Positions 19,200-60,500 of a stretch of 64,000 nt of DNA are shown here, piece by piece. The position numbers and the translations under genes were made by a program. The notes beneath the pieces were generated by a model that saw only the letters and a list, made by a program, of their open reading frames with translations, was not told the origin of the DNA and ran no database searches. How positions within the stretch are numbered: the stretch's first letter is position 1; the number at the start of each line of letters is the position of its first letter. Origin of the DNA: Piromyces finnis finn (taxonomy: Eukaryota > Fungi > Neocallimastigomycota); NCBI GenBank assembly GCA_002104945.1, contig MCFH01000022.1, positions 124,001 through 188,000 on the forward strand, given 5' to 3'.

Positions 19200-19240
19200 A
19201 AATTAAGTTTTTTCCTAAGGTAGTTATGGTAAAAAACGCG

Positions 19241-19251
19241 GTAAAGATTAT
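19241..19251 (-). promoter_or_regulatory. Self-priming PBS of B (ATAATCTTTAC)
   Basis: Abuts the 5' LTR; exact complement at 19485-19495. Confidence 0.8.
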
Positions 19252-21732: not shown

Positions 21733-21747
21733 AGCTTATAATATTTT

Positions 21748-22311
21748 TGATACGTGATAAAATTATATAGTTAAAAATATTAAATTTATATAGTTATTTT
21801 TAAGGGTTAGCAATTATTTAAGAAAAATAATAATTTAATCTATTATTGAATAACCAATAAAATATTATAAAAATTTTATATAAAAATAACAAAAATTCAC
21901 TTTTATTAAGAAAAGAGAGTTCTTTGATAAATATAATTAATTATTGAGAATTTTTATATCTGTTTTAACTAAAAATATTTTTTATATTAAATATATAAAT
22001 GTACTTAAAATTATTTTTATTAATAAAATAAAAGAGAAAGTTACAAATAAGATTTTTTTTATGTTTAATCCTTTTTTTTTCTTATATTCAAATACTTTGT
22101 GTATAAATTGTTAAAAATAATAAAAGTAAAAGCAAAATAATTAATAACACTAAAAAATAATTATTAGTTATAATATAAATAAATATACAAATAATCATTT
22201 TTTTTTTTATTCTTTTATTAGAATATATTATTTTGTATAAATCCCTTTTGTTCGACTCCTGGAAATAAAATAAATAATTAAATTTATGGTATTATTAAAT
22301 AATACGTACCA
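21748..22311 (+). repeat. 5' LTR of C
   Basis: TGATAC...GTACCA. Confidence 0.95.
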
Positions 22312-22319
22312 TAAATTTT

Positions 22320-22337
22320 TGGTGGAGAATCCGGGCG
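22320..22337 (+). promoter_or_regulatory. Primer binding site TGGTGGAGAATCCGGGCG (tRNA-Ala-like 3' end)
   Basis: TGG start 8 nt after the LTR; its complement reads as T-stem, acceptor stem and ACCA; identical copy at 57339. Confidence 0.85.
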
Positions 22338-22472
22338 AGCAAAACAAAATAATATGAAAAACAATAAAAGATAATAATAATATTTAGAAGAACTTATATA
22401 TATATATATATATAAAAAAAAAAAAAAAAAAAGGAAATATAAATATATAAATAATAAATAAATAAAAAAAAA

Positions 22473-23723
22473 ATGATGGATGCATCAAAATTACAAAGGG
22501 CTATCCCACAGTTAAATGAATATGGAAAGGATGTGGATAGTTGGATGGAAGAATTTTCTCGGATAATGGAAATCTATGACATAACTGAGCCTAGAAGAAT
22601 TTTTATATGGGCTAAGGAGGCTGTTGACTGTGATATTAAAGAAGTATTAAATTCTTTAGTAAAAAGGAGAAACGACGAAATGCATTACCCAAAATTCAAA
22701 GAAATCCAAGTAGCCATAGAAGAGTACTTAGAGATAACTCCTAATGAAAAATGTTCTAACCTAAAACTTCTGAAAATTAGGGATAATGAAACAATAAAAA
22801 ATTTCAACTATAGATATTTAAAATTATACCATCATTTAGATCATGATTATATGAGGTTGATATCTGTAGAAGATTATTTAAATGCTATTAAAACGAGAGT
22901 ATATCCACACTCTCAGGTTATTATTTCAGAATGTGAAACATTAACAGAAGCTTTTAAAGTGGCTGAAAGAGCTGAAAAGGCCGAGAAGAAAACAATGAAT
23001 AATAGTTATATTAACACTAATAATAATGCTAATACTGCTAACATAAACATGTTAACCCAAAACTATGGATATTCCTCTCTTTTGAATCATCCAATATATA
23101 GTACCCTTACTAATCATAGCTACCCAGATGATTATCCTAATATGAATTATGGAAGAAATTATAAGAATATGGATATGTACGATCAACCTAGAAATTTTTA
23201 CAATAATCATAATAATTATAATAATCACTTAGGGTATAGTAATTACAACACTTATGAAAATAGTCCTAACCTCAATAATAGTGGCAATCCTAGAAACAAT
23301 AATCGATTCGGAAATATTAACAAAATAGGATATATTAAAAACGCTAATAATTTTAATCAAACCAAATTTAGTAATTTTCGCAATTTCAATAATAATAACT
23401 CTAATAATGGAAATATTGAATTTAATAAAGATGAAAATGGAAATATTAATGCAGATAACCACCAAGGATATAATAATAATATTAATTATAATAGAAATAA
23501 TACTATTAGTGGAGGGTATAATTCTAACCCTGGCTTACAAAACAATACTTATGGTAATAAGCTTAGGGCCATTCAGTGCTATAGATGTAAACAGCATGGT
23601 CACAAAGCCAGTGTCTGTCCATATTCTATGGAACAGATTAGGATGTTTCAAAACGGTACTAATAATAAAGAAGTAAATAATAAAGATGGAATTAACAATG
23701 TTAAGCATTTAAACTCCAATTAG
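22473..23723 (+). CDS. gag: Gag of element C (416 aa, Asn-rich)
   Basis: Zinc knuckle CYRCKQHGHKASVC; position after the PBS. Confidence 0.92.
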   Translation: MMDASKLQRAIPQLNEYGKDVDSWMEEFSRIMEIYDITEPRRIFIWAKEAVDCDIKEVLNSLVKRRNDEMHYPKFKEIQVAIEEYLEITPNEKCSNLKLLKIRDNETIKNFNYRYLKLYHHLDHDYMRLISVEDYLNAIKTRVYPHSQVIISECETLTEAFKVAERAEKAEKKTMNNSYINTNNNANTANINMLTQNYGYSSLLNHPIYSTLTNHSYPDDYPNMNYGRNYKNMDMYDQPRNFYNNHNNYNNHLGYSNYNTYENSPNLNNSGNPRNNNRFGNINKIGYIKNANNFNQTKFSNFRNFNNNNSNNGNIEFNKDENGNINADNHQGYNNNINYNRNNTISGGYNSNPGLQNNTYGNKLRAIQCYRCKQHGHKASVCPYSMEQIRMFQNGTNNKEVNNKDGINNVKHLNSN

Positions 23724-23740
23724 GGAGAAGGATAACTCCC
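23708..23740 (+). promoter_or_regulatory. -1 frameshift signal of C (T TTA AAC plus GGGAG/CTCCC hairpin)
   Basis: Heptamer in the gag frame; the -1 frame is open from 23708 into pol. Confidence 0.75.
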
Positions 23741-23992
23741 AATAATCAAACCGTCATTAATGGAAAATATAATGAAAATAAAGATAATAAAAATATAAAT
23801 TTATTCAATTATTCAAATAATAAAAATCCACTTTATAATAATGATAATATACAGTATTCTAATAATCAATATGAAAATAATACTAATTATGCTCAAAAAG
23901 AGATTAATTTAAATAATAAGAATACTACTTCTTACGGAACTAGTTTTAATTATTCCAACAATGAAAAATATAAAGCTGAAAATAATAATGGG

Positions 23993-26900
23993 ATGAATAC
24001 TGATTATTCTATGAATGTATCAAACCAGAATGGAATTAGTGATATGTACCCTGAAATTGTTGCTGTTGCTACTAGAAAGAATAAGAATAATGATAAGAAA
24101 ACATTTACCCCATATAAAGTACCACCGGGTAAATTAAAAGATAATCCTGTACCAATATCTACCGCGGCAATGAATCACAATAAAACTGATATAAATGATG
24201 ACGACGAAGTAGTCCCACTTACAAGCGAGATAGATATGGAGATGAATGAACCAGTAAATATTAATAACCCTAAAGTAAATAATACTGATAATCATGAAGA
24301 TCAACTTAATAATGAAAAGGATAAGAGCAGTAGTGATGAGCAAGGTGAACCAACAAAGAAAAATAATCCTACTGTCAAATCAGGAAAAAGAATACATGCT
24401 GATAAAATTAGTGAAAATAACTCTAACTATATTGATGATGAAATTGGAAATAAATTGAGGAAAGATATTATTACAACATTTGATAATAGTTATAAAACAA
24501 AACCAACCAATCCTAAGAGGAAAAATTCCTATAATGACACTACTGATGATGACGCTCAATCTGATAAGAAAAGGAAAACAGAAAAATTGCAGTTTCTTGA
24601 TTTGTCATTTATTAATCAACCTAATATAACAAATGCAAAGAAGAAAAATAAGTTAGATAGAATAAACGAACTTTCAAATCTAGTTAGTGAAATTAATGAA
24701 GATAATAATAAAGCAGATGAATCATTGACTAAAAATGAAAAGCATATTAAAATACTTGAAAAGTTGGAAAACATGTACATTGAAGATCTGATTCGGGATA
24801 TTGTATCAACGGAAGTCAAAACTAAGTTAGTAAATTTGCTAGACTGGTTCCCTAAATTTAGAAGTGAATTTATAAAATCTTTAAAGTTAACTTCATTTAA
24901 AAACCCAGCATTAAATGTTATGTCACTTTTTAGTAGAAATAAAATTATTAAAGTACCTGGTGAAGTTGAAAATAATAATGCTGAAATTTTCTTGGATACC
25001 TGCTCTAGTGTTAATTTAATTACTAAATCAGCATTAAAGAAATTTCAAATCAACAAACCTTGTATTGGTACAATTACTGAAACTTTTCTACAAGCCTTCT
25101 CTAATAATAATTCAAATTCTAGTATTTATGAATTAAGTATAAAAATCGGTGATCTTACCTTTTCTGAATATTTTAGACTAGTAGACAAAGATGACATTTT
25201 TGATATACTAATTGGGGTTGATTCTTTAAAAAGAAATCGATTTGTTATTAACTTAGTGGATGATACTTTATATTTTATGGATTTAAGTAATAATCCAATT
25301 AAACTTACCAATTTGTGCTACGATATTAATATATACAATAATGGAAATGACAATAATCAAACTGAAGTTAATGATGATAAAGAACAGAATAATACTGATA
25401 ATGTTAAGCACACTAATTTTGATGATTATTACCTTTCAACTTATGGGATATTACCAGCATTAATTACAGTCACTAGTGAATCAACTACTAATAATCAAGG
25501 TTTAGATATAAAATTGAATAATTTAGAAATTAAAAGAAACATAATAAATAATATTATTACTGTATTACCTTTGGATATTCAAAACAAGATGAAGGATGTC
25601 TTTAACAACTTTATGGAGGTAATAGCCATTAAAACAGATGATTTAGGTAAGACTAAATTACTTCCTCATCATATTGACTTGCTACCAAATACTAAACCGA
25701 TTAAACAGAGAGCCTATAGATTACCGAAAGTTAAAGCTGATGCTCTAAAGGTAGAACTTACTAAGCTCATAGAGAATGGTCTTATTGAACCATCCCATTC
25801 ACCTTGGTCTTCACCTGTAGTTTTGGTTCCGAAAAAGAATAACCAAGTAAGAATGTGTGTAGATTACCGAATGTTGAATAATTTTACAATTAAAGACTCC
25901 TATGCTCTCCCCCTTATAGACGACATTCTGTATTATGTAGGTAATAATGCCGCAGTTTTAAGTACTATTGATTTGTTCTCAGGATACCATCAGATTCCAA
26001 TGCATCCTGATGATAAAGATAAAACTTGTTTTACCACTATTTTTAGTAATTATAATTTTGTTGTTATGCCCTTCGGTTTGTGTAATGCACCTGCGACTTT
26101 CCAAAGGGAAATGAACAGAATATTTTTTGATTTAATTGGAAAGTCTGTGTTCGTTTATATTGATGATTTAGTTATTTTTTCTAATTCTCTAGAACAACAT
26201 GTCACTGACTTAGCTTCTGTATTTCAAATTTTAAAAGATAATGGTTTGAAAATAAATATTGATAAATGTAATTTCTTTAAGCAAGAAGTTGAATTATTAG
26301 GTCATCTACTTTCTGTTGATGGTTTAAAACCTTTGGACTCGAAAATAAATGTTATATTAAATTGGATTCCACCTAAAAACATTAAACAACTTCGTTCCTT
26401 TTTAGGTGCAGTTGGGTATTACCGTAAGTTTATTTCTAACTTTGCACAAGTAGCTCAACCACTATACGAGCTCACTAAAAAAGGTATTCCTTACGAATGG
26501 TCCGATTCTTGTTCTAATTCTTTTGAAAATTTAAAATTAAAGTTAGCTTCGGCTCCAATTCTTTCTCCGCCTGATTTTAGCAAACCCTTTATTATAAGAA
26601 CGGATGCTTCTAGAAGTGGTATCGGTGGTGTTTTAATACAATTGGACAAAGATAAATTTGAGAAACCATTATACTACCAGAGTCGTACCCTATCTGATAC
26701 TGAAAGACATTATAGTATTACTGAACTTGAGGGAACTGCCGCCTATTATTGTGTTATGAAATTTAAATCATTTATTACAGGTAATAATTTTGATACTTTA
26801 TTAATTACAGATCACAAACCTTTAGTCAGCATTTTCAAAAATAAGGAACCAACAACAAGCCGCCACATAAAATGGATTACTGAATTTAGTGCATTAAGGG

Positions 26901-28414
26901 TGATTGTTCAATTTGAGGAGGGGAAGAAGAATGTTTTAGCAGACGCTTTATCTAGAATGGAGAGTTCTCAAACCCCTGTAATTATTAATAATGATGAAAA
27001 AAAAAATAGTAAAATTAATATTTCTGAATTTAATAATGCTAATGATTATTCTAATGAAGTTGGAAATAAAAATAAAATAGTTACTACAAAAAGTAAAATA
27101 AAAAAGAAAGTTAGATTTGATGACGATATTATAAATGTTAGTAAAAATGTTGATATTAGTAAAGAAATAGCAAACGTGATAGTTGAAAATAAAGACGTAA
27201 ATGGAGATATTCGTGTAGGTGATAGTAATGAACAAAGAGTAATGTTAAATAATTTTTTCAATGACTTTATAAAAAAAAGAATTATTTTAATTGATGGAAT
27301 AGAATATTATAAACATGGAGATAATTTTAGGAAAATAATTACTGATAATAATGAGAAAATCCGATTAATAGCTCAAGCTCATGCAATAGGACATGAAGGT
27401 ATTTATAAAACATATCATAGGTTATGTAGAGATTATTATTGGAAAGGAATGTCTAAAGATATAAAATTATTCATCAAAGGTTGCCATAAATGTCAAACAT
27501 GTAAAGTGCAACCATTAAATAAATATCCTGAAAATATTGCTACTCCACCAGAACTTCCTTTTACTCGTGTTAGTTTGGACTTAATAGGACCTTTAAATAC
27601 CACTAAAAGAGGCTCAAGGTATATTATTGCTTTAGTGGACTATATGACTAAATGGGTAGAGGCTTCCCCATTAATAAAAACTGAATCTGAAGATGTGATA
27701 AGATTTTTAACGGAAGTGTTTTGTAGGCATGGTATTCCAGAAGTCTTGGTTACAGATAATGGACCACAATTTAGTTCAGATAGAACTAAAGCATTCCTAG
27801 ATCTTAATGATGTGTTTGTACAATATATTACAACTTACCATCCTGCTTCAAATGGACAAATTGAAAACAGAAATAAAGAAATTTCAAAATATTTAAGAGT
27901 GTTAGGAAAAAATAATGAAGAATGGGACGATATATTACCTAGCGCTTTATGGGCACTTCGAACTGCTAAAAATGAAGTAACAAAATTTAGTAGTTTTGAA
28001 TTATTATATGGTCGCAGAGATATGCAACCATTTGAATTATCAATAAATTTAGATAAAAAAGGACCTGAAGAAACAGATGATGAATACTACCTTAGAAAAT
28101 TTATTACTCACCATAACTGGATTCAGGAAGCAATAAACAATATTGAGACTGCAAATGAGGTTTGGAGGGATAGAAGAAAACAAATAAGGAGATTAAGAAG
28201 TGAATTTAAACCCGGAGACCTTGTTTTGATAAAACACTTCAATCGTCGAAAATTGGACCCGTACTTTATTGGACCTTTAAAAATTATTAAACGACAATTC
28301 AACACTGTGACGGTATGTGACCCACAGACAGGGGAAATAGCCGAACGCAATATTCACCTTAAAAATATAATTCCGTATTATACCTCTTATGTAGGATATG
28401 TAAATGAAGAATGA
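23993..28414 (+). CDS. pol: Pol of element C (N-terminal extension, protease, RT, RNase H, integrase; no chromodomain)
   Basis: FLDTCS, YIDD, HxxxHxG...CxxC zinc finger, DDE core, GPY/F-like YFIGPL; the protein ends shortly after this motif. Confidence 0.96.
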   Translation: MNTDYSMNVSNQNGISDMYPEIVAVATRKNKNNDKKTFTPYKVPPGKLKDNPVPISTAAMNHNKTDINDDDEVVPLTSEIDMEMNEPVNINNPKVNNTDNHEDQLNNEKDKSSSDEQGEPTKKNNPTVKSGKRIHADKISENNSNYIDDEIGNKLRKDIITTFDNSYKTKPTNPKRKNSYNDTTDDDAQSDKKRKTEKLQFLDLSFINQPNITNAKKKNKLDRINELSNLVSEINEDNNKADESLTKNEKHIKILEKLENMYIEDLIRDIVSTEVKTKLVNLLDWFPKFRSEFIKSLKLTSFKNPALNVMSLFSRNKIIKVPGEVENNNAEIFLDTCSSVNLITKSALKKFQINKPCIGTITETFLQAFSNNNSNSSIYELSIKIGDLTFSEYFRLVDKDDIFDILIGVDSLKRNRFVINLVDDTLYFMDLSNNPIKLTNLCYDINIYNNGNDNNQTEVNDDKEQNNTDNVKHTNFDDYYLSTYGILPALITVTSESTTNNQGLDIKLNNLEIKRNIINNIITVLPLDIQNKMKDVFNNFMEVIAIKTDDLGKTKLLPHHIDLLPNTKPIKQRAYRLPKVKADALKVELTKLIENGLIEPSHSPWSSPVVLVPKKNNQVRMCVDYRMLNNFTIKDSYALPLIDDILYYVGNNAAVLSTIDLFSGYHQIPMHPDDKDKTCFTTIFSNYNFVVMPFGLCNAPATFQREMNRIFFDLIGKSVFVYIDDLVIFSNSLEQHVTDLASVFQILKDNGLKINIDKCNFFKQEVELLGHLLSVDGLKPLDSKINVILNWIPPKNIKQLRSFLGAVGYYRKFISNFAQVAQPLYELTKKGIPYEWSDSCSNSFENLKLKLASAPILSPPDFSKPFIIRTDASRSGIGGVLIQLDKDKFEKPLYYQSRTLSDTERHYSITELEGTAAYYCVMKFKSFITGNNFDTLLITDHKPLVSIFKNKEPTTSRHIKWITEFSALRVIVQFEEGKKNVLADALSRMESSQTPVIINNDEKKNSKINISEFNNANDYSNEVGNKNKIVTTKSKIKKKVRFDDDIINVSKNVDISKEIANVIVENKDVNGDIRVGDSNEQRVMLNNFFNDFIKKRIILIDGIEYYKHGDNFRKIITDNNEKIRLIAQAHAIGHEGIYKTYHRLCRDYYWKGMSKDIKLFIKGCHKCQTCKVQPLNKYPENIATPPELPFTRVSLDLIGPLNTTKRGSRYIIALVDYMTKWVEASPLIKTESEDVIRFLTEVFCRHGIPEVLVTDNGPQFSSDRTKAFLDLNDVFVQYITTYHPASNGQIENRNKEISKYLRVLGKNNEEWDDILPSALWALRTAKNEVTKFSSFELLYGRRDMQPFELSINLDKKGPEETDDEYYLRKFITHHNWIQEAINNIETANEVWRDRRKQIRRLRSEFKPGDLVLIKHFNRRKLDPYFIGPLKIIKRQFNTVTVCDPQTGEIAERNIHLKNIIPYYTSYVGYVNEE

Positions 28415-28433
28415 AAAGTGAAATTTTAAGGAA

Positions 28434-28476
<43 letters not shown>

Positions 28477-28532
28477 AAATTTCAAAATCTAAATTTCAAA
28501 AAAAAAAAAAAAAATAAAATAAAATAAAATAA

Positions 28533-28568
<36 letters not shown>

Positions 28569-29018
28569 AATAAATAAATAAATAATAAATGATAATAAAT
28601 AATACTAATAAATGATAGTAGTAATCATAATAAATAAACAATATTACAAATATATATAAAAATTTAATACTTACAAAAATAATTTAAAAGAATTTCAGTT
28701 GATGGAAAAATACATTTCAATTAATAGTAATTGTGAAATTTCAAAATTTCAAAATTTCAAAATTCAAATTGTAAATTTGATCAAATAATAATTAATAATT
28801 TTAATATAATAATTATAAATAATAATTATAATAATAATTTTTATTTAGTATATATATATAAAAAAAAAAAAAAAAAAATTTAAATTTCGAAATCTAAATT
28901 TTAAAAAAAAAAAAATTTTAATAATAATGATAATACTAAAATTTTCCTTTGTTTTATCGTATATCAATGCTTGCCATAAGACTTCAGGAGACGAAGTTTA
29001 ATTTCGGCGGAGGCATCT

Positions 29019-29583
29019 TGATACGTGATAAAATTATATAGTTAAAAATATTAAATTTATATAGTTATTTTTAAGGGTTAGCAATTATTTAAGAAAAATA
29101 ATAATTTAATCTATTATTGAATAACCAATAAAATATTATAAAAATTTTATATAAAAATAACAAAAATTCACTTTTATTAAGAAAAGAGAGTTCTTTGATA
29201 AATATAATTAATTATTGAGAATTTTTATATCTGTTTTAACTAAAAATATTTTTTATATTAAATATATAAATGTACTTAAAATTATTTTTATTAATAAAAT
29301 AAAAGAGAAAGTTACAAATAAGATTTTTTTTATGTTTAATCCTTTTTTTTTCTTATATTCAAATACTTTGTGTATAAATTGTTAAAAATAATAAAAGTAA
29401 AAGCAAAATAATTAATAACACTAAAAAATAATTATTAGTTATAATATAAATAAATATACAAATAATCATTTTTTTTTTTTATTCTTTTATTAGAATATAT
29501 TATTTTGTATAAATCCCTTTTGTTCGACTCCTGGAAATAAAATAAATAATTAAATTTATGGTATTATTAAATAATACGTACCA
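29019..29583 (+). repeat. 3' LTR of C
   Basis: Matches 21748-22311 apart from T-run length. Confidence 0.95.
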
Positions 29584-29587
29584 TTTT

Positions 29588-30267
29588 TGTGTAATAATTA
29601 TATTATATTTATTATATAATAATAATTATTAGCTTTAAATTAATAATATAAACTATTATTAAAATGTGAAAATAAAGGTAAAATTAGAAACTTAACTTAA
29701 TGAGTTTATTATAAGAAATTATAATATACAAAACCAAATGTATCAGAATTATTTTGTGTATTTAATAGTTTTTTTAATATTTATTTTATTACTTATTATT
29801 TTGTATAAAGTTATTTATTATAATTAATCTTATAATAATAACTCTTGATTTCTCAAATCGAACTCAAGAGTACTATTTATATGTTTTATTCTATTAAATT
29901 AAAATTTCTAAGAACATTCTAATCTTAACAAGAATCTTTTTAGGAAAAGACTAGAAGAAAAACCTAAAAAGTTATTTGATTGATATTCTAATCATACCAA
30001 TCATCGTAATATTAAGTAAAACCGTTGATAACGGGTAAAACCTTAATATCCGATTTCCTATTACATACTAATATATAGTTGTATAATATTATTAATGTAA
30101 TTAGTATGTGTTTTATCTTTTATAATACAAGTATATATATAAATGAATGTATAAATACATAATTAAATAAATTAATTAATCTAATATAGCGAATGAATAA
30201 TTATTAACTAAATAAATTATTTGTAATGTTTAATACTAAGAATAAATAATAAGTATTTATTTTTACA
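29588..30267 (-). repeat. Solo LTR, family J (copy J1)
   Basis: TGTGTAAT...TTTACA; shares a structured module with four other copies; strand inferred from G-U pairing. Confidence 0.75.
29917..30054 (-). other. Structured RNA module in J1 (ENE-like loop, hairpin, U-rich pseudoknot)
   Basis: Stems covary across the five J copies. Confidence 0.7.
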
Positions 30268-30271
30268 ATTT

Positions 30272-31894
30272 TGATAAATAATAATTATAAATATATTATA
30301 AATTTGATATTAGTAGAAAATTTGTGAAGATATTAACTGGATTTAAAACAAATTCAGATAATAACTATAATTAATTAAACATAATAATTAGAATTAAATA
30401 ATCCCAATAATTATTTTAAAACACCTTTAAAAGTCACCTTTTAAATTCTGATTCAGTGAAAGGGTTATGATTTCAAAAAATTTAATATCAATACACTATA
30501 ACCCTTAACCAAAAATAAACAAACACGAAACAAGGTGTAACTCGCCAAAAACGATCGCTACGGCTGTAAGTGATACGGCTATGAAACCAGGTTTATTAGA
30601 AAGCTTAAGGAAAAAGCTACATTTTGGTACAATCGCGGTCCTTCTAACTGGTCATTTAAGGAAGATATGATCATTTGAAGATTTTAATAAGTAAATTAAA
30701 ATTAATATGATATCAAGTATGGATCATAGACATTTCTTATGACTTGACGAAAATTAAAAAGATATCAATAGAAATTCTAATTATATTAATTTAATTAATG
30801 ATAGTGACTGTTACTAAAAATAGAACTAAACCATTTAGGTGTAACAGTTAACATTTATAAATTAAATAATTTTAATTATTATAAAATAGGTTAATGGATC
30901 AAGTGTTTAAATGATTAATCATATGTTTATTTTATTTTATGTCATGACAAAACAAACAAACAAGCAAACAAACAATCTTATTATATTATTAACATATTAC
31001 ATGTAATACTTTATTTTTATCAATTTAATAATCTGAACAAAGAATATAAAATAGAATGAATTGAATTTGATTTTAATTCTTTGTAAAGATTATAGTTATA
31101 ATCTTAATTATATAGTTATTAAATATATTATCATTTATATTATTATTAATAAATAAATAAAATTTTATAAAAAAAGTTATTCTAAAGAATAAATATTAAT
31201 TTTTCATTTGGAAGTTTAAAGGGTTATTTTATATTTAAATTTAATTTCTTAAAAACATATTTACTATATAATTGATAACATTCTGACCTGGCCGCATAAC
31301 CAAATCCAAAAACTTAACAAAATTTTATTATAAAATAATTATTAAATAATTTTATATAGTTTATTATAAAAATATAATTTACATAAAATCAAATATTTTA
31401 TAAATTTATATATTTGATTGGGTTAAATTATAAAAATAATTTTTAATATAAAGAATAATAATATTTTTTAGTAGAAAATGAGAAGACTTAGATTACTAAT
31501 AATAAGTTAAATTTTAATAATAGTTAATATAATTAATTAGTGAATACATAATAATATTTAAAAGACAAAAATAAGTTTTTATATAATAAAAATTATTGTT
31601 AAAAAGAGCGTAAGAACAATAAATAAAAGAAAATATAAAAACGAAATTAAACTTGTCTAATTTGTAATTATTGTGTTAATAATAAATAATATTTTATAGA
31701 ATAAATCTGGTGTTATTATTCTATATAAATATTATTAAAATAATAAAACTATTAAAATTATAAAATAACTTAAAATAAATTAATAAAACTAGTAGATATT
31801 GTTAAAGCTCGTACAATAGCTGTCGAGATAAAACAATATAAGATAACAGAAGAAGTAGTTAAAAAGTTGTAATATAATTACCAATCCGTTATCA
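30272..31894. repeat. Solo LTR, family F, interrupted by E
   Basis: 4-bp TSD ATTT. Confidence 0.85.
30323..31319. repeat. Solo LTR, family E (997 bp)
   Basis: TG...CA; 5-bp TSD AAATT; reverse copy at 61691-62822. Confidence 0.85.
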
Positions 31895-31897
31895 ATT

Positions 31898-33002
31898 TGA
31901 TACGCTACTCACATAAAAACATGATAAAAACTAGCTGAATAAACACGACTTAACCCATAGTAACTTATAATAAAAAATAAACAATAATAACCCTTAAAGA
32001 TGAATGAATAATAATTTTATGAAAATATAACCCTTTCTTTAAATAAATAATATTATCTTTATTATATAATAAATTCTGAGTAAAAACGACCTAATAGTGA
32101 TAATAATAAAATAAATTATTAAATAAAATAAATTATTAAATAAAATAAAACGACTTAATCCAATAATGTACTAAAATAATAAAATAATAATAAATAAATA
32201 AAAATGAATAAATAAACTAAAAATAAAATGATATACATCAAATTATTAATTCTAGTGTTTATCCAAGTGTTCTTTAGAAATTCTCTTAAACTTATAAATT
32301 AAAAAAATAACTAATTGAGTAATTATTACTAAAATGATAAACTTAAAACCTGGAAATAGAACAATAATAACAATTCCAAAGATAAAATACAGAACTCTTT
32401 TATGTTTCTGTATAAAATGAGTGTTTATAATAATTGATACTTTTAATATTTTAATTTCATTTTAATTTTATTTTAATATTATTTTAATTTTAAATTTTAA
32501 TTATTTTATTCAAGGTATTATACATTTAATGATAGTCAATGATAATTTATAATAATTTTTCTAAATTTAAACATTTTGAAGTAATAAGAAAATCAAATAA
32601 GTAATATTCTATAATATTTTATAATACTAAGACATAATTTTAATTTATTCTTTTAATTTTAATAAATAATAACAATAGTAATAATAGCATTTAATAGTTA
32701 AAAATAATAATACATGTAATAAATGAAAATGTATAAAAGGAAGATAAAATTCTTCTTTATAAAGGGCGGACAATAAATAGAGAATAAAAAGACCATAAAC
32801 AGATAATAAATAAATTATAAAATATAATAAAGATTTAATTTAAAACATAATAAGAGTTTATTTTCGAGTTTTGAGTGATTTATTTGTTAATTATAAAACA
32901 TATTTTATTTTATTTTAAATTTATTGTTTCATCATTATAATATAGAATTTATTATTTATTAAAAACATTATATTATTCACAAATATATCGGTCAACGCAT
33001 CA
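31898..33002 (+). repeat. Solo LTR, family L
   Basis: Reverse complement of 8489-9648; followed by TATT. Confidence 0.85.
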
Positions 33003-33006
33003 TATT

Positions 33007-33790
33007 TGATACAAGATGCATAGAAAAATATAATATTTTAAATATTTTATGAATAATATCTAATCCTTTTATAAATTGTATATCAATTACTAGTATTAAT
33101 AATAATTAAACTATATTAGTATAAATTATTATGACGCAAATGTTACACATATATTAGAATAATTAATTACACAAGAAATGAAAAGATATAAAAATAGTGA
33201 AAAAGAACCAGATATAAAGAAAAAAGAGAAAAAGGGAGAAAAACTTTTCATATATAAATAATACTTGATATTTTAGTTTTAAGTATAAGTTCTATTTTAT
33301 TTTATTTTAGTTACAGTTTATTTTAGTTTAGTTTTAGGTCACTAATTACGTATTTAGTATTTACTATATTTAATTCAGTTTAAAATATTAATTATAAAAG
33401 AAAAGAATAATTATTGTTTATTTTTATTATTTCAAAAAGTTATATTTTATTATTAATAAGAATTTTATCAACATATTTTTATATTTACATTTTATATTTA
33501 AGTATTTATATTTATTAAATCATAACTTTCGATTCTACTAGTATTGAATGTTATTAATCTTATAGTCATAATAATAATAATAATTAAATAAAGAAACTCT
33601 AAACCAAAATCTATTTAATTATATTATTATAAAATTTATTATTTTTATTATTTGTTTTTATTATTTATTTTTATTATTATAAAATAGAAATAAATACAAT
33701 ATTATCTAATATATTATTCAACTCTCATTCCCTATTGCTAACGTTCACAATTATATTTTATTTATGGTGTTTTTGAAATATATTGCATCA
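33007..33790. repeat. Solo LTR, family M
   Basis: TGATAC...GCATCA; 4-bp TSD TATT. Confidence 0.85.
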
Positions 33791-33794
33791 TATT

Positions 33795-34627
33795 TGTGTA
33801 ATAATTATTATATATTTAATAATAATTATTATCTACAATATAATAATACAAATCGTAATATGTATTATTAAATTGAGAAGTTTCTTAATAGTAAATAAAA
33901 ATGAATAATTATCTTAAAGAGTTTATTATAAGTGAATTATAATAACAAACACAAAATATTAAGACTATCTTTAATGTAAATATTTTTTATGAATATAGTT
34001 TTTGAAAGGGTTATTTATTATAATTGTCTTAAAATAATAACTCTGGATTCTTTAGTGGAATTCCAGAGTTCTTATATTTATAATTTTTTGATAATTTAAA
34101 GTTTAATATAGAATTTCTAATCTTAACAAATAATCTTTTTAGGAAAAGACTAGAAGAAAAACCTAAAAAGATATTCGATTGATAACTAATATATCAATCA
34201 TCGTAATATTAAGTAAAACCGATTAAAATTCGGAAAAACCTTAATATCCGATTGTCCTAATATGTATTTATATTTTCTAATTGTTTCTATAAGTTATTTC
34301 AAAATACGATACATAAATATAAAATACAAACGTAAAATAAAATATATAATGTTTCTTATAAAATGTAATACAAAAATTATTAATTAAAAAATAAATGAAT
34401 GTTTACTATTATTTTAAATATATTACTAAATTAAATAAATAAATAATTAATATAGTAATTAAATAAATTTTAAATTAAGTAAATGAATAACTAATATCAA
34501 TATAGATAAATGTTTATAGTAATTTAAATGAATGTATGCTAATAGTTTAAATAAATAATTAATTTAATAATTAAAAAATAATTAAATAAGAATTAATTTA
34601 TACAAAAAATAATTATTAATTCTTACA
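33795..34627 (-). repeat. Solo LTR, family J (J2); structured module at 34115-34252
   Basis: TGTGTAAT...CTTACA; conserved module. Confidence 0.75.
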
Positions 34628-34682
34628 TTGTAAGAAATATTTGTGGCCATAAGTTTGCCCACAAATATTTCAATTGAAACCA

Positions 34683-35481
34683 TGTCACGAATACTAGTGG
34701 AATCTGCAATTTCAAGATCACTTGAAATTGTGAAATTACTTATAAAATTTCAAAATCAATAATATTTTATTTTCAAATAAATTATAAAATTATATATTAA
34801 GAAATATTTAAAAAATTTATAAAAGGTTAAGATATGAACTTAACCCTTAATATTTTTATAACAAATAACTTTAACCCTTATCATCAAAATTAAATAAGGG
34901 AAAACACTCGTATCTCCTTAACGAATGACGATTTTTGAATAATGGTTGGGAGATTGTGGGTTCGTTAGAAAGCCACGCTTGAGATAAACAACATATCTTA
35001 AAATCAGGTCGATATCTCTGCTGGTTCACGAGATATTCCAATTTAATTTAAAGATATTTTGTTAGTAATGATTAATTGTTTATTCAGAGAATGATCACCC
35101 CTGATGTATTGAACATAAATCATTCACCCAGAAGGATATAAATTATTGTTTTAATTAAATTAAAATTATTTTCCGGAATTAATTAACTTTATTTTATAAT
35201 AATTATTTCAATAACATAACTTATAATTTTTGAATTAAAAGATAATAATTACTAATATTATATTCAATGAATTATATTATAATTAAGAAATAATTAATAT
35301 TATGAATATATAAACAATAGTTATTTTTAATAATTAGTAATAAGTCTTAAGTTTAACCTTAATATTATAAAAAATAATCATGTATTAAAAAGTTATTTTA
35401 TTATTAAATGTAAAATTACAAATAGTATAAATAGTCTAGAATAGTCTTATGAATTAAATCTTTGTAAAGATTATTACCTTA
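34683..35481 (+). repeat. B-family solo LTR, U3-side part (remainder at 44226-44454 in the opposite orientation)
   Basis: Starts TGTCACGAATACTAG; flank AACCA matches TGGTT at 44221-44225. Confidence 0.85.
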
Positions 35482-36002
35482 TGATATGAAATATTATATA
35501 AAACTCTAATTATTAATAAAATTATTTTATTAATAATTACATAAAATAAATTAAAATAGTCATGTAACAACGTGACTAAAAGCAATTGAGGCGTAAATAA
35601 ACTCACAAGATAAAATAAATTTAAGTGATAACATAAATTTATTTTATTAATTTAAGTAATATAAACATAAAATTATAACATAATTTTATGTTATGTAAAT
35701 AATTTCTTTTATTTATTATTTTATTTATAATATTTTACATTTTATATTTATATTTTATTGTATTTTTATTATACTTTAATAAATATTTTTATACTTTTTA
35801 TACTAGTTATTATATATTTATTAATTAAACAAACAAAACATAGTTTATAATTATTAAAAGATATATAAATGTATTATTATTTCTTATAATTAATTCTTTG
35901 CTTCTTGTATTTTTCTAGCCAAATTTATATTCAATAAAATTAATTTGAAATAATATTACATAAAGTTTCCCCCTAAAAAGGAAATAGAACCGAGTTATAT
36001 CA
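35482..36002. repeat. Solo LTR-like element T nested in the B-family LTR
   Basis: TGATA...TATCA; 4-bp TSD TAAG (CTTA at 35478-35481, TAAG at 44451-44454). Confidence 0.65.
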
Positions 36003-36003
36003 C

Positions 36004-36730
36004 TGTAAAAGTTTTATAAATGTAAAACAGATTATAAAATTTTTTACAATAAAACAACAACACAAAATAAAGAAAAAACAAGAAAATAAATTATATTTAA
36101 AAAAATATCTCTTTTATTAATTTTATTTAGTTATTAACTAAATAATAGTCAATAACAATTACATCGTTTTAATCAAGAAATTTTACATGTATTTATATTT
36201 TTTGTAAATTATATTTTAATATACTATTCTATTTAATTATACATATATTCAATATAAAATAAACAAAACTAATTTAATACTAATTTAATTAAATAATAAA
36301 ATAATAAAACTAAACTAAAACTAATTAAATACACTTTTGATTCAATTTGAGTAAACTGCAAATTGAATACAGTCCATGTATTACCTATATATTAATTAAA
36401 TATTAATAATACTATTTATTATATATTTATAATTAAAAATACTAATTTAAAACTACGCTAAAGTTATTAAACTAATTTTAATTAAATAAAAACTTTTTAA
36501 GATTTAATTTGAATATTTAAAATATTTAAATTTAATTATCCATTAATTTAAATATTTATCCAAATTTCATTTCTAACTTTGATATTTTAAAATTAATATT
36601 TATTTAATTATTCCATAAAATTTATACAATAAATTTTATAAACAATTTTTTCATTAAAATATCAAAATTATTATTCAATAATTATTAATTAATTATTAAA
36701 TAATTTAAAGATATACTTTATATCTTTACA
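36004..36730. repeat. Solo LTR, family R (related to the A LTR)
   Basis: TGTAA...TTACA; inverted copy at 44459-45185. Confidence 0.85.
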
Positions 36731-37146
36731 TTAAATTTATTAACTATTTACAATAATTATATTAATTATTAATTTATAAAAATTAAATATTTTATAATTA
36801 GATAATAATTAATTAAAATTAAAAAATTTAATAATTAAAATTGTTCATGTATAAAAAGAACAAAAATTGACAAAAATTACGAATCTTTAGCGTTAGTAAT
36901 TTTTTAACTTAAAGTTAATAAAATTTATAAACTCCTATAAAACCTAAAACTTTAAAAATTTTAATATTTTTAATAACTTAATATATGCTGATATTAAGTT
37001 ATTGTTAAAATAAAAATATTATTTAATTTTCTTTATATAAATATTATTAGCTTTACGCCTTCAATAGGAGAGCGTATTATATTTGTTAATTAATATAACT
37101 AGTGTACTTACCACACTTTTCTTTAATAAAAAATCGCTTTTTGACA
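36731..37146. repeat. Part of an SO-family LTR (other part at 45186-45290)
   Basis: Both parts are contiguous in the copy at 61121-62874. Confidence 0.75.
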
Positions 37147-37154
37147 AACATTAT

Positions 37155-38071
37155 TGTGTAGTAATTTTATTATAATATTTATATTAAATAGTATAATATA
37201 ATTACTTGTCGATAACTCAATATTAAAATTTAATATTAAATTATATGTATATGGAAAGAAATAATAAAAAATTAAATATGAAATTAAAAAACTAGAACTT
37301 AACGAGTTTATTATAAGGATTTATAATAAACAACAAAAAACACAAATGGGAAGAGGGATGAGAATAAAATGTATAATATAAGAATTATGTTTTATTAATA
37401 ATGATTTTTTATTAATTAATTTTTATTAAATAAAATTATTTGTTATTTATTATAATTAATTTTTCTTATAATAATAACTCTTGAATTCTAAAGAATTTCA
37501 AGAGTGTTTATTTATATTTTTATTAAAAAATAAGGTTAAATAAATGAGTTCTAATCTTAACAAATAAAATGTTTAGGAAAAGACTAGAAGAAAAACCTAA
37601 ACAAGTTTTCAACCAATATTCTAATCATATTGGTCATCGTGTAAATTTTAAGTAAAACCAATTATTTGTAATAATAATCGGAAAAACCTTAAAATACCGA
37701 TTTCCTAAAGTAAATCCGTGTTTAGATATAACAGGTAAATTAATTAGTAATATATAATTAAAGGGTAAAATTACGGATTCTTGTATATAAATATTATTTA
37801 AAAATCAAATGAACAAATTATTATTTAATTAAATAAATTAAATAAATTATATAAATATATGAAATATATTTAACTAAATAAATTAAATAAAGTATCTGAA
37901 TGTATACATTATATTTAACTAAATAAATTAAATAAATAATTTAAGTGTATAAAATATTATTAACTAAATAAATTAAATAAATAATTTAAGTGTATAAAAT
38001 ATTATTAACTAAATTATTAAACTAATAAGAAATATTAATTATTTAGATTGAAATAATTATTATTTCTTACA
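37155..38071 (-). repeat. Solo LTR, family J (J3); module at 37549-37701
   Basis: TGTGTAGT...CTTACA; conserved module. Confidence 0.7.
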
Positions 38072-39293
38072 TATTGATACGCTACTCATATAAAAACATA
38101 ATAAAAACTAGCTGAATAAACACGATGTCAAGAGTTAGAGTGGATTTAGAACTATAATTAAGTCTACTAGGTTAGGATAGGCTTAATTATATAGTAAATA
38201 ATAAATTTTTATAAATAAAAGAGTAATAAATATAGTTTTTTAAGAAATATTTTATTTGATTTTTATAATATAAATAAATGATAATTATTAATTTTAAATA
38301 TTGAATTTACTATATAAAAATGAGTATAATAATCTCACAAAGAACTTCTTAAAGTTGTTCTTTATTCAACTTATTTATACTTTCATTTTTAATATAATGT
38401 TGATATTAATAAAGTATAATAATAATATAATTTAAGTTATACATGAATAATAATATAAATATAAATATAAATATTAATAAAATATAATAATAATATAATA
38501 TAATTTTCTTTAGATATCGATATTAATAAGTTGTTAAAAATAATATTAATAATTATTTAAATGAATCATATTTTACTAATTGGTTTGTTTAATATTAATT
38601 AATTGTTACACTATTTATCTCCGGATAATAAATAGCTTTCCAATTAATATTTATATTAAATAAACTATTATTAGTAAAATATTATTAAATTAATATTTTA
38701 ATTAATTTAACTAATAATTCAAAATTATGAAATTTCATGAAATGTCAAATTTCATGAATTGTGATTTTGACAGTGATAATATCTGTATCTAAAATTTTAT
38801 AAATAAAAATAAAGAAAATAAATATAAATGATTTTTATACTTGTTCATTTTCAAGTATTAGTTAGTTTTATAAAATAAGTTTATTTAATTATAAATTTTG
38901 ATATTTAATAACTCTCGTATTATTAAATATATATATATATATTTTATTATTAATACATCTCGTATGTATATGAACATAATTATAAATATTATTTTAATAA
39001 ATTTAATATTATTATCTAATTTTAACGGATTATTAGGAACAATTTTAAAATGAACAATTTCTATCACTATTTATATAAAATTATTATTTTAAAGTATAAT
39101 TATAAACAAATAAAGACTGTTTAATTTAAAAAGAATTAAACAATTAAATAAACAAAAAGTTTACATTTATAATTTTTAATTTAATAATTTTATACATGTT
39201 AAATCTTTTAATTTTTTCTGTATTTTAATTATTGTTATTATTATTACTATTATTATTAATTTATAATTTATAAATTTAATTATTTATTAATTA

Positions 39294-45185: not shown

Positions 45186-46811
45186 TTTAAAATAAAATTT
45201 TTAATAATAAAATTTTAATAATTTTAAAAAAATTTTTAATTTTTTCCATGTGTCGAAATTTTTTAAATTTTTATATATGTTATTGTGACAATGTGCTACG
45301 GTTCAAATAAGATATCACAAAACACTTGAATAGTTATAAAAATAAAAATTTATTTAATTTTAATTTTTATTCATTTAATTTATTTTTGATTTTTCAATTT
45401 TTAAAATTTTTCTCAAAAATCTCGTACTTTTTCCAACTATCCATTATTTGAAATTTAATGATTTTGGATAGCTAAGGAATTAAATTGATTTCATTCATAA
45501 TATATGGATCATTCACTGTAACATTAATTAAATCCTTAATATATATTATGAATAATCTCTTAATATTTGAATAGAAAAATTTTTAATTTATAATTAATAA
45601 ATTTTTAATTTATGATATGTGTAACATTTTTGCATATCATATATTATATATTCAATTATAACATATAATAAAATTATATTATTCAATTAATTATGCCCTT
45701 TTTTAGACATAAATAATAATTTTTCTGTCGAGGTATCTTCTGTTTTGTGTGTAACAATTGCCTCTTTTAGTAAAAATTATAATTAATTTTTATGTCATAA
45801 TTTTAAATTATAAAATATTATACAATAAAGTTAATTAATAAAATGAATCTTAATTAATAATAAAATATACAATCATTTTAATAACATGAATTAAGTAAAT
45901 TTTATAAGAATAAAACATTATAATAAGACTAATATTAAAAGTAATGAAATAACTATATACAAATAATATAACTATATAATAAAATATAATTAATTAATAA
46001 GAAAATGTATAAAAATTATTATATAATTTTATAATTCAAAAATAGAGTTAAACAGTAGTAAGGAATGTAAATAGTTCATAATTGAGTTATAGCAATTTTA
46101 ACTATTTATGTTCATTCCTTAACAAATTGTAAGAAATTAGATTTATTTTATAATAAATAATCTATATTTCTTATTAAAATTAATTTATTATATTTTTTAT
46201 TTAACCTTTAATATTTTATTAAATTTTATTAAATTTTATTATAATACATAATGTATTTTAAATGTAATGTAAATTATTGTATTTAGAAAAAATCGATTAT
46301 TAGAATTTTCCCGAATCCATTCGGTTTTATCTAATAATACGATGATTGATAAGAATAGATTATCAATCGAAACTTTTCTAGTTTTTTCTTCTAATCTTTT
46401 TCTAGAAAAGAAATTTATTAAGATTAGAACTTTCTTTTATTCTTGTAATGAGGTATATCTAATGATAAGGGTTAGACTAGAAAATTATTAAGGTTAGATT
46501 AATGAAAATTTCATAATTATATTTTTATAACCAATCATTAAGTAATTAATTCACTTATCAAATTGTATTAAAAAAAAATAATTTTCATGTATAAAAGAGA
46601 GATTAAGAAAGATAAAATAGTTCTTTAGTGTTTTTATTAATAATTAATAAAAATTAGTTTTTTTGTTTCGTCTTTAGTTTGATAATACACTGACCTAGCG
46701 AGTTAGTCGTATTATAATAATAAATTTAATAAATAAACATTATTAAAAAAAATATATATATATTTGATTACATTAGAGTGTGTGTGTTTATTATTATAAT
46801 ATTTCGTTACA

Positions 46812-59873: not shown

Positions 59874-60500
59874 TGTAAGAAATAATAATTATTTGATACA
59901 TAATTAATATTTCTTAGTTAAAATCATTAATTATTAATCATTAATTAATGTTATTAATATTAGTTTATTTAAATAATTATTCTCATTTAAATTTATTTTA
60001 ATTATTTATTTTCACTTAATTTTAATATCTTAAATTACATTTAGCCATTTAATTATATTATTCATTAATATTTTATTTAATATTTTTATTAATTATATTT
60101 ATGCATTTAATTAATTAATTTAATTAATTACTTATATTTAACTTTATATTTTTATCAAATATATTTAATTATTTATTTAATTAATTACTTTAAAATAATT
60201 ATTCATTGTTTAGGAATCGATATTTTAAGGTTTTTTCCAATTTCTAAAATAATTGGTTTTACTTAAAATATACGATGATCAATATGTATAGAATGTTGAT
60301 CGAACTTTGTTTAGGTTTTTCTTCTAATCTTTTCCTAAACAAAAAATTATTTTGTTAAGATTAGATAAAATTTTAATTTAAACTTTAAATTTATTAAATA
60401 ATATAAATAAGACTCTTGATTCTCTTCTAAGGAATCAAGAGTTATTATTATAAGAAACAAATTATAATAATAAAAGTGTTTTTAATTTTATTTTACTTAA
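59874..60500 (+). repeat. J-family LTR (J6); module at 60216-60365; right end uncertain
   Basis: Starts TGTAAGAAAT; conserved module. Confidence 0.65.

What the first reader, a model, noticed from the sequence alone, without database searches (positions are those of the whole stretch)
29917..29970. Telomerase-like U-rich H-type pseudoknot downstream of the ENE-like loop
Seen, minus strand in J1-J3: UUUAGG-UUUUUC-UUCUAGUC-UUUU-CCUAAA-(10-15 nt)-AA-GAUUAGAA. Stem 1 covaries: UUUUUAGG/CCUAAAAA, UGUUUAGG/CCUAAACA, UUCUAG/CUAGAA. Stem 2 alternates between a G-U and an A-U pair. A covarying hairpin (GAUUG/CAAUC, GAUCA/UGAUC) links it to the ENE-like loop, and a CUCUUGA/UCAAGAG hairpin follows. Known: the order stem, UUUUUC loop, stem, U-run resembles the human telomerase P2b/P3 triple-helix pseudoknot. 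Inference: the ENE-hairpin-pseudoknot cassette may be an undescribed RNA class.
Basis: partly seen in the sequence, partly recalled or inferred. Interest (0 to 1): 0.75.

Follow-up and report, generated by a model that had tools for sequence, protein, structure and literature searches.

The report
Probable pseudoknot in fungal retrotransposon LTRs
A 55-base stretch repeated in five retrotransposon terminal repeats of a very AT-rich gut-fungus-like genome can fold into a knotted RNA hairpin next to a poly(A)-clamp-like hairpin; the first stem is well supported, the second is plausible but unproven, and the likeness to the telomerase knot is only superficial.

Summary
The motif lies at 29971-29917 (minus strand). 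It recurs in five copies of one solo-LTR family ('J', about 870-920 nt, TG...CA ends), stacked among Ty3/gypsy LTRs upstream of tRNA genes.

Stem 1 (9 bp) has three pairs with compensatory changes, and RNAalifold predicts it independently.

Stem 2 (9-10 bp) pairs the stem-1 loop with a strand 9-14 nt downstream. It shows no covariation. Its two strands, with the UUUUUC loop, are among only four invariant runs of 11 nt or more in the whole LTR. A crude pseudoknot energy beats the best nested fold by about 4-6.5 kcal/mol. No composition-matched shuffle reaches it (0/300 in each copy).

The knot belongs to a ~215-nt string of conserved helices: ENE-like hairpin, hairpin 2, knot, hairpin 3. G-U pairs (8 cells against 0 A-C) point to selection on RNA of this strand. 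No Rfam family matches.

The telomerase comparison is weak. Only two consecutive A-U pairs could take U-A-U triples, and loop 3 is not A-rich.

Other notes of this scan report the same module in other LTR families of this genome. I could not test those.

Verdict: a probable new structured element beside a known kind (transposon ENEs). Moderate interest.

The parts
29586..30303 (-). J1 solo LTR (family J). The 3' end reads ...AUUAUUACA(CA) and lies next to the 3' LTR of the intact element at 21747-29584. The 5' part is diverged, so that boundary is approximate.
   Evidence: Self-BLAST and MAFFT of the five copies; termini read.
30003..30054 (-). ENE-like hairpin. It has an outer stem AUCG/CGAU, a lower stem of 7-8 bp, facing U-tracts (UUUU(U) and UUUU), and an upper stem that changes between copies.
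   Evidence: the lower stem has 3 pairs with compensatory change. RNAalifold predicts the hairpin.
29978..30002 (-). Hairpin 2, an 8-9 bp linker hairpin. In J1 and J3 its loop carries GAUUAGAA, the same letters as the 3' strand of stem 2.
   Evidence: 3 pairs with compensatory change and 3 with a one-sided (G-U) change. Loop pairing energies.
29963..29971 (-). Stem 1, 5' strand (CUUUUUAGG).
   Evidence: pairs with 29936-29944; 3 of 9 pairs show compensatory change.
29957..29962 (-). Loop 1 (UUUUUC), invariant in all five copies.
29947..29956 (-). Stem 2, 5' strand (UUCUAGUCUU), inside the stem-1 loop. G is replaced by A in the two plus-strand copies.
29936..29944 (-). Stem 1, 3' strand (CCUAAAAAG), preceded by loop 2 (UU, 29945-29946).
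29927..29935 (-). Loop 3, 9-14 nt. It is variable apart from UUUGUU/UUUAUU at its 3' end, and it is not A-rich.
29917..29926 (-). Stem 2, 3' strand (AAGAUUAGAA). UUAAGAUUAGA is invariant in all five copies.
29842..29870 (-). Hairpin 3 (CUCUUGA ... UCAAGAG). J2 has CUCUGGA/UCCAGAG, one compensatory pair.
   Evidence: alignments.
29810..29841 (-). Two invariant AU-rich blocks: UUAUUAUUAUAAGA (TATA-like) and AAUUAUAAUAAAUAAC (contains AAUAAA). A second AAUAAA block (CUUAUAAUAAACUC) lies at 29702-29715. Their roles as promoter or poly(A) signals are inferred, not shown.
34115..34170 (-). Pseudoknot copy in J2 (LTR about 33775-34629).
37549..37604 (-). Pseudoknot copy in J3 (LTR about 37160-38079).
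46374..46429 (+). Pseudoknot copy in J4. This LTR (about 46120-46443 plus 51518-51900) is split 14 nt after the knot by a chromovirus (46444-51512; 5-bp target duplication ATTCT).
60307..60366 (+). Pseudoknot copy in J5 (LTR from 59872). Stem 2 is 9 bp and loop 3 is 14 nt.

Best explanation
The stretch is the core of a conserved H-type RNA pseudoknot inside one family of Ty3/gypsy-type long terminal repeats.

Shown: a 9-bp hairpin (stem 1) is kept by compensatory changes. Its 18-nt loop holds an invariant U-rich stretch. Ten bases of that stretch are complementary to an invariant strand 9-14 nt downstream of the hairpin (stem 2).

Inferred: both stems form at once and stack, with UUUUUC crossing the deep groove of stem 2. 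The knot is one unit of a ~215-nt folded domain (ENE-like hairpin, hairpin 2, knot, hairpin 3) that lies just upstream of the TATA-like and AAUAAA-like blocks of the LTR. That would place it in U3, hence in the 3' untranslated end of the element's RNA.

More weakly inferred: the domain acts in cis on the 3' end of that RNA. The ENE-like hairpin would grip the poly(A) tail, and the compact knot would brace it or hinder 3'-to-5' decay. The complete invariance of both stem-2 strands and of loop 1 suggests a constraint beyond pairing, such as tertiary contacts or a bound protein.
For: Five copies against 0.02 expected.

Stem 1: 3 of 9 pairs have compensatory change, 95.6% of cells are paired, and sliding the partners drops pairing to 32-46%. 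RNAalifold predicts the ENE-like hairpin, hairpin 2 and stem 1, and leaves both stem-2 strands single-stranded.

Stem 2: 98% of cells are paired. The one variable internal pair switches between G-U and A-U.

Single-sequence MFE folds pick stem 1 in two copies and stem 2 in three, so the two helices are about equally stable (-7.6 to -9.4 against -6.9 to -8.2 kcal/mol) and compete only in a nested model. A Dirks-Pierce-style estimate for the knot is -14.7 to -15.9, against -8.8 to -10.6 for the best nested fold. The best-knot energy is not reached by any of 300 dinucleotide shuffles in each copy.

Across the LTR only 31% of columns are invariant. There are four invariant runs of 11 nt or more, against 0.0012 expected, and two of them are the stem-2 strands.

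The helices hold 8 G-U cells and 0 A-C cells, so selection acted on RNA of this strand. No Rfam family matches.
Against: Stem 2 has no compensatory change: 8 of 10 pairs never vary, so covariation says nothing for it.

There are only five related copies, all solo LTRs. I found no further copies in JGI metagenomes, the bacterial/archaeal genomes set (GTDB), viral contigs, or 29 fetched gut-fungal retroelement contigs.

The energy estimate is crude and uses no pseudoknot-specific software.

The transcript sense of the LTR is unproven. The tRNA-proximal end of J1-J3 corresponds to the U3 start of the two intact elements here (A and B). The termini also resemble those of the chromovirus LTR in the reverse sense. 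If that holds, the module would be antisense to the element's genomic RNA.
Confidence: 0.5

Rival explanations
1. Only the hairpins are RNA structure. The two invariant blocks (UUUUUCUUCUARUCUUUU and UUAAGAUUAGA) are kept because each is read sequence-specifically. The reader could be a protein on the RNA (Gag/nucleocapsid or a host factor). It could instead be a transcription factor on the DNA, reading an inverted repeat (TAATC ... GATTA) about 100 bp upstream of the TATA-like block in U3. On this view their complementarity is not used within the molecule.
For: Stem 2 varies far less than the proven helices: 2 of 10 pairs vary against 16 of 28 (Fisher p 0.07). Unpaired loops 1 and 2 are invariant too. 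That pattern fits sequence recognition better than plain pairing. The blocks sit just upstream of TATA-like and AAUAAA-like blocks.
Against: A ten-base complementarity between a hairpin loop and a nearby strand is rare in shuffles (0/300 in each copy). The one substitution keeps pairing through G-U, which only works at RNA level on this strand. The flanking helices clearly evolve under RNA pairing constraints.
Confidence: 0.2
2. The stem-1 loop pairs, but not as a static intramolecular knot. One option is that stem 1 and stem 2 are alternative folds of a switch. A second is that the loop kisses the hairpin-2 loop. A third is that the loop pairs with the downstream strand of a second RNA molecule, linking two genomic RNAs for packaging.
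For: MFE folds flip between stem 1 and stem 2 among the copies. In J1 and J3 the hairpin-2 loop carries the same GAUUAGAA and could pair with the stem-1 loop at -7.8 kcal/mol. Dimer-linkage sites and pseudoknots are known in Ty1, Ty3 and retroviral RNAs (PMC11381356, PMC6844567).
Against: The hairpin-2 loop complementarity is not conserved (-2.0 to -4.2 kcal/mol in J2, J4, J5). Loop lengths (6, 2 and 9-14 nt) allow both stems at once. The estimated knot is more stable than either alternative.
Confidence: 0.15
3. One reading: a telomerase-type triple-helix pseudoknot. Loop 1 would lay U-A-U triples into the major groove of stem 2, and loop 3 would lie in the minor groove of stem 1.
For: The order of parts and the UUUUUC loop 1 match the human telomerase P2b/P3 knot (my own recollection of the sequence; the general architecture is in PMC7583470). 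Loop 1 and the AA at the start of the stem-2 3' strand are invariant.
Against: At the junction end, stem 2 reads U-A, U-A, C-G, U-A. At most two consecutive U-A-U triples fit, and loop 1 has no C placed for a C-G-C triple. Loop 3 is U-rich and variable. There is no template or telomerase context.
Confidence: 0.12
4. Chance complementarity in low-complexity AT-rich repeat DNA, copied five times by transposition, with no function.
For: The genome is 13-30% G+C, and all five copies share ancestry, so they count as one observation of the complementarity.
Against: The copies are only about 70-75% alike overall, yet these blocks are invariant. Neighbouring helices show compensatory change. Shuffles never reach the observed energy.
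Confidence: 0.03

Closest known systems
[quoted passage not shown]
   Same: H-type topology; a U-rich loop 1 (UUUUUC); stem 2 begins with A-U pairs at the helical junction; strong conservation of loop 1.
   Different: It is not part of a telomerase RNA, being five copies inside LTRs. Only two consecutive A-U pairs are available for triples. Loop 3 is not A-rich. Stem 2 is AU-rich and 9-10 bp.
ENE elements of viral, lncRNA and transposon RNAs (KSHV PAN, MALAT1, plant and fungal transposon ENEs of Tycowski et al. 2016; Arabidopsis Evade/Copia93, PMC12501189)
   Same: The hairpin 25 nt upstream of the knot has the ENE layout: stem, facing U-tracts, upper stem-loop. It sits in a retrotransposon, where ENEs are known to stabilise the RNA by clamping the poly(A) tail.
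   Different: The knot itself does not have ENE topology, because its two U-tracts flank a segment that pairs with a downstream strand rather than folding into its own hairpin. The papers I could search or read describe no ENE coupled to a downstream pseudoknot. I could not read Tycowski 2016. Poly(A) binding is untested here.
Recoding (frameshift or readthrough) pseudoknots of retroviruses and retrotransposons (e.g. Tca2, PMC2194720)
   Same: An H-type pseudoknot in a retroelement.
   Different: There is no gag-pol junction, slippery site, or stop codon followed by an open frame. It lies in the LTR, outside any long ORF.
Pseudoknots of Ty1 and Ty3 genomic RNA (5' long-range pseudoknot of Ty1; predicted GAG and POL pseudoknots of Ty3, PMC11381356)
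   Same: cis-acting pseudoknots in LTR-retrotransposon RNA, with roles in reverse transcription, dimerisation or packaging.
   Different: Those lie in the 5' region or in coding sequence. This one is in the LTR, next to an ENE-like hairpin, and shares no sequence with them.
3'-UTR pseudoknots of RNA viruses, in which a hairpin loop pairs with downstream sequence or with the poly(A) tail (exoribonuclease-resistant RNAs from my own knowledge; the alphavirus poly(A) pseudoknot from the title of Olsthoorn 2022, seen in a reference list)
   Same: A hairpin loop pairs with a nearby downstream strand in a 3' region, and the loops are U-rich.
   Different: No sequence or family match (Rfam blank). The function here is unknown.

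Membership tests
Telomerase RNA triple-helix pseudoknot | H-type order: stem 1, loop 1, stem 2, (loop 2), stem 1', loop 3, stem 2' | tested here: met
   Complementarity in all five copies (98% of stem-2 cells paired). The loops are 6, 2 and 9-14 nt. Stem 2 has no covariation.
Telomerase RNA triple-helix pseudoknot | A run of three or more A-U pairs at the junction end of stem 2, facing a U-rich loop 1, to give U-A-U triples | tested here: not met
   The junction end reads U-A, U-A, C-G, U-A in every copy, so only two are consecutive.
Telomerase RNA triple-helix pseudoknot | An A-rich loop 3 making minor-groove triples with stem 1 | tested here: not met
   Loop 3 is AUUCUUGUU, AUUAUUUGUU, UUUAUUUGUU, GAAAUUUAUU or AAAAUUAUUUUGUU.
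Telomerase RNA triple-helix pseudoknot | Part of a single-copy RNA with a template region | tested here: not met
   There are five copies, each inside a TG...CA solo LTR among gypsy elements.
ENE (poly(A)-clamping) elements | A stem, a U-rich internal loop on both sides, and an upper stem-loop | tested here: met
   This is met by the upstream hairpin (30054-30003), whose stems change with compensation while the U-tracts stay fixed. It is not met by the knot itself.
ENE (poly(A)-clamping) elements | Lies upstream of the poly(A) site of a polyadenylated transcript and forms a triple helix with the tail | not testable with these tools
The runs found are only guessed to be RNA. There is no biochemical tool.
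Any Rfam 15 family | A match at or near the gathering score | tested here: not met
   The whole window gives only 3 tRNAs. An E-value scan of J1 gives two chance miRNA hits, E 2.4 and 9.1.
Retroelement recoding pseudoknots | 5-9 nt downstream of a slippery site or stop codon at a gag-pol junction | tested here: not met
   No ORF of 100 aa or more lies in any J copy. In J2, the one copy listed at 30 aa, no ORF spans the knot. All copies lie in solo LTRs.
Ty3/gypsy long terminal repeat | TG...CA termini, target-site duplication, and paired copies flanking gag-pol | tested here: inconclusive
   The termini TGTAAG...TTACA and the stacking with other LTRs, separated by 4-5-nt spacers, are seen. No full-length J element is in the window, and none was found elsewhere.

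The most novel reading that the evidence does not exclude
The ENE-like hairpin, hairpin 2 and the knot together form a new class of composite 3'-end module of retrotransposon RNAs. In it, a mechanically stable U-rich pseudoknot, possibly with a short U-A-U triple, works with a poly(A) clamp to protect the element's RNA or to shape its 3' end for reverse transcription. A stranger variant is that the module is read from the antisense strand of the LTR, so that it stabilises an LTR-derived antisense RNA.
Probability: 0.25. Interest if true: 0.7.

Novelty: new variant of a known kind. Interest (0 to 1): 0.5.

Why it matters
ENE-type poly(A) clamps are one of the few RNA tertiary motifs shown to raise transposon mobility (Evade, PMC12501189). 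If a conserved pseudoknot is wired to such a clamp, that would extend this strategy. It would also give a compact natural RNA-stability cassette to test. And it would add a structured RNA family from anaerobic gut fungi, whose extremely AT-rich genomes are poorly explored for RNA structure. If stem 2 proves false, the finding shrinks to a covarying hairpin with an unusually conserved loop next to an ENE-like hairpin.

Tried and rejected

Local steps did read the whole window as a target: the covariance-model scan and scripts that read the window file.

Hunt for more copies, to test stem 2:
- An ENE-side anchor pattern in JGI metagenomes gave 11 chance loci and no J copy.
- Two J patterns in the bacterial/archaeal genome set and in viral contigs gave nothing.
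- The window's own retroelement proteins are not on record.
- Relatives of the three gypsy clades of the window were found.
- The model R1 and an ENE-shape scan found no module in a representative subset of those loci.

Other leads:
- The weak R1 hits in both LTRs of L034 are not the module.
- A repeat downstream of J3 and J5, 98% alike, is an unrelated younger repeat, not J-internal sequence.
- Aligning J to LTRs of known sense to fix its orientation gave scores within shuffle noise.

Readings rejected:
- Ribozyme or other known RNA family: Rfam is blank.
- Recoding pseudoknot: there is no ORF context.
- Pol III A/B boxes: not conserved in the module, judged by eye on the alignments.
- The knot as a second ENE domain: its U-tracts sit at opposite ends of stem 2.

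Full report
CONTEXT

The window is eukaryotic and extremely AT-rich: 13-17% G+C between genes and up to 41% in coding parts. It holds three tRNA genes. It also holds several Ty3/gypsy retroelements with reverse transcriptase, RNase H, integrase and, in some, chromodomains.

The nearest protein relatives are unnamed proteins from rumen and gut metagenome assemblies and gene models of Orpinomyces, at 51-86% identity. The host is therefore an anaerobic gut fungus or a close relative.

Self-comparison shows many LTR families stacked upstream of the tRNA genes.

WHERE THE FINDING LIES

The LTR is about 870-920 nt. It starts TGTAAG and ends TTACA. All copies are solo LTRs.
- J1: about 30303-29586, minus strand.
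- J2: 34629-33775, minus strand.
- J3: 38079-37160, minus strand.
- J4: plus strand, split by a chromovirus at 46444-51512 with target duplication ATTCT.
- J5: from 59872, plus strand.
- A 265-nt 5' fragment at 40103-40367.

The copies are only about 68-74% alike in BLAST alignments.

OBSERVATION

The 21-nt core has 5 matches against 0.02 expected. nhmmer and a covariance model with filters off find exactly five full copies in the window.

ANATOMY (J1, minus strand)
- ENE-like hairpin: 30054-30003.
- Hairpin 2: 30002-29978.
- Stem 1, 5' strand: 29971-29963.
- Loop 1 (UUUUUC): 29962-29957.
- Stem 2, 5' strand (UUCUAGUCUU): 29956-29947.
- Loop 2 (UU).
- Stem 1, 3' strand: 29944-29936.
- Loop 3: 9-14 nt.
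- Stem 2, 3' strand (AAGAUUAGAA): 29926-29917.

About 45 nt further on comes hairpin 3 (29870-29842). It is followed by two invariant AU-rich blocks, one TATA-like and one holding AAUAAA. A second AAUAAA block lies about 100 nt beyond them.

EVIDENCE FOR THE HELICES

I counted the pairs of my structure on the five-copy alignment.
- 97.1% of cells form standard pairs. Sliding the 3' partners by 1-3 columns gives 32-46%.
- Nine pairs have compensatory changes: three in the ENE-like lower stem, three in hairpin 2 and three in stem 1.
- The stem-1 changes are U-A to G-C, U-A to C-G, and C-G to U-A. They need at least three separate events.

RNAalifold, run without my structure, predicts the ENE-like hairpin, hairpin 2 and stem 1. 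It leaves both strands of stem 2 unpaired.

The helices hold eight G-U cells and no A-C cell. A DNA palindrome, or RNA of the other strand, would not give that asymmetry.

STEM 2

Covariation is silent. Eight of ten pairs never vary. One switches between G-U (J1-J3) and A-U (J4, J5). The terminal pair is broken in J5.

Other evidence favours pairing.
- Conservation: only 31% of LTR columns are invariant. There are four invariant runs of 11 nt or more, against 0.0012 expected if invariant columns were scattered. Two of them are loop 1 plus the stem-2 5' strand, and the stem-2 3' strand.
- Competition: single-sequence folds choose stem 1 in J1 and J2 and stem 2 in J3-J5. The two helices have similar stability and are mutually exclusive only in nested folding.
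- Energy: a Dirks-Pierce-style sum gives -14.7 to -15.9 kcal/mol for the knot, against -8.8 to -10.6 for the best nested fold.
- Shuffles: an exhaustive search for the best two-helix knot is never matched in 300 dinucleotide shuffles of each copy. The observed values are -13.7 to -15.9, and the shuffle means are -0.8 to -2.8. Because the five copies share ancestry, this is one observation, not five.
- Sterics: my own estimate from general pseudoknot geometry is that the loop lengths permit both stems at once.

The same data carry a warning. The proven helices vary in 16 of 28 pairs, stem 2 in only 2 of 10 (p 0.07), and the unpaired loops 1 and 2 are also frozen. A plain helix would be expected to drift with compensation as its neighbours do. 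Something more than pairing constrains these letters. It could be tertiary contacts, a bound protein, a second pairing partner, or a DNA-level role.

In J1 and J3 the loop of hairpin 2 repeats GAUUAGAA and could compete for the stem-1 loop (-7.8 kcal/mol). This is not kept in the other copies.

TELOMERASE LIKENESS

[quoted passage not shown] Here the order of parts and the UUUUUC loop agree. But the junction end of stem 2 offers only two consecutive A-U pairs before a G-C. Loop 3 is U-rich and variable. The context is an LTR. I treat the resemblance as one of general shape, not of membership.

WHAT IT DOES

ENE hairpins that clamp the poly(A) tail are known in transposon RNAs of plants and fungi, and one was shown to raise the mobility of an Arabidopsis LTR element (PMC12501189). 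That paper cites Tycowski et al. 2016, which I could not read. The upstream hairpin here fits the ENE layout.

The layout of the J LTR is:
- a variable 5' third, with 45-nt tandem repeats in J3;
- the folded domain;
- the TATA-like and AAUAAA-like blocks;
- a more conserved 3' part.

This layout suggests that the domain sits at the end of U3, and so in the 3' untranslated end of the element's RNA. My preferred mechanism is that the domain acts in cis on that 3' end, with the knot bracing the clamp or hindering 3'-to-5' decay. This step is inference only.

CAVEAT ON STRAND

- In the two intact elements next to tRNA genes (A at 21747-29584, B at 20285-12585), the U3 start faces the tRNA. In J1-J3 the end facing tRNA-Ala is the 3' end in the module's sense.
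- The J termini also resemble those of the chromovirus LTR better in the reverse sense (by eye).
- The J fragment at 40103-40367 abuts an integrase fragment in a way that fits the reverse sense.
- Attempts to settle this by LTR homology gave only noise.

The module may therefore be antisense to the element's genomic RNA. The G-U asymmetry and the U3-like variable region argue the other way. I put about 60:40 on the sense reading.

WHAT FAILED

No further copies could be fetched; the full list is under Tried and rejected. After that I sent no query containing those places to any collection, paper or findings search. Local steps did read the whole window as a target (the model scan and scripts that read the window file).

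EARLIER NOTES OF THE SCAN

Notes of this scan report the same ENE-plus-pseudoknot module in other, more diverged LTR families elsewhere in this genome. They claim many compensatory changes and a copy in native context. I could not see those sequences, so they are leads only. If they hold, they would supply the stem-2 test that my window cannot.

VERDICT

- Stem 1 and the surrounding helices are real RNA structure.
- The pseudoknot is probable (about 0.5).
- The triple-helix, telomerase-like reading is weak.
- The function is inferred.
- The kind is a new variant beside known transposon ENEs.

Noticed in passing
window 46444-51512: An intact chromovirus (1398-aa gag-pol with chromodomain; LTRs 46444-46811 and about 51143-51512, 99.5% alike) is inserted into the J4 LTR 14 nt after the pseudoknot, with the 5-bp target duplication ATTCT.
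   Followed up: partly
window 12585-20285 and 21747-38079: Mirror-image stacks of LTRs lie upstream of tRNA-Gly/Thr and tRNA-Ala. Three of the four families present in both stacks are mirrored in orientation. Successive LTRs are separated by 4-5-nt spacers, as if each new element used the same target site. The U3 start of intact elements A and B faces the tRNA gene.
   Followed up: partly
window 63150-63202, minus strand: A second hairpin with facing UUUU tracts (8-bp lower stem, 12-bp upper stem) lies in a different LTR. No hairpin-2 or pseudoknot follows it, and it is on the strand opposite to the sense that another first-reader note gives that LTR.
   Followed up: partly
window 36585-37146 and 61121-61676: A repeat about 425-560 nt long and 90-98% alike, starting TGTCAAAAAGCG, lies just downstream of J3 and about 420 nt downstream of J5. 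It is much younger than the J copies and looks like another LTR family.
   Followed up: partly
window 37815-38046: Four tandem 45-nt repeats rich in AAATAAA lie on the plus strand in the 5' (module-sense) third of J3.
   Followed up: no
window 40103-40709: A 265-nt 5' fragment of a J LTR abuts, in opposite orientation, a 240-nt fragment of a chromovirus-type integrase zinc-finger region. This fits an element with an internal deletion and bears on the sense of the J LTR.
   Followed up: partly
window 29985-29992 and 37618-37625, minus strand: In J1 and J3 the loop of hairpin 2 repeats GAUUAGAA, the 3' strand of stem 2. This may be a trace of a duplication, or a competing partner for the stem-1 loop.
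   Followed up: yes
I did not examine it further or send it as a query to any search tool.
   Followed up: no
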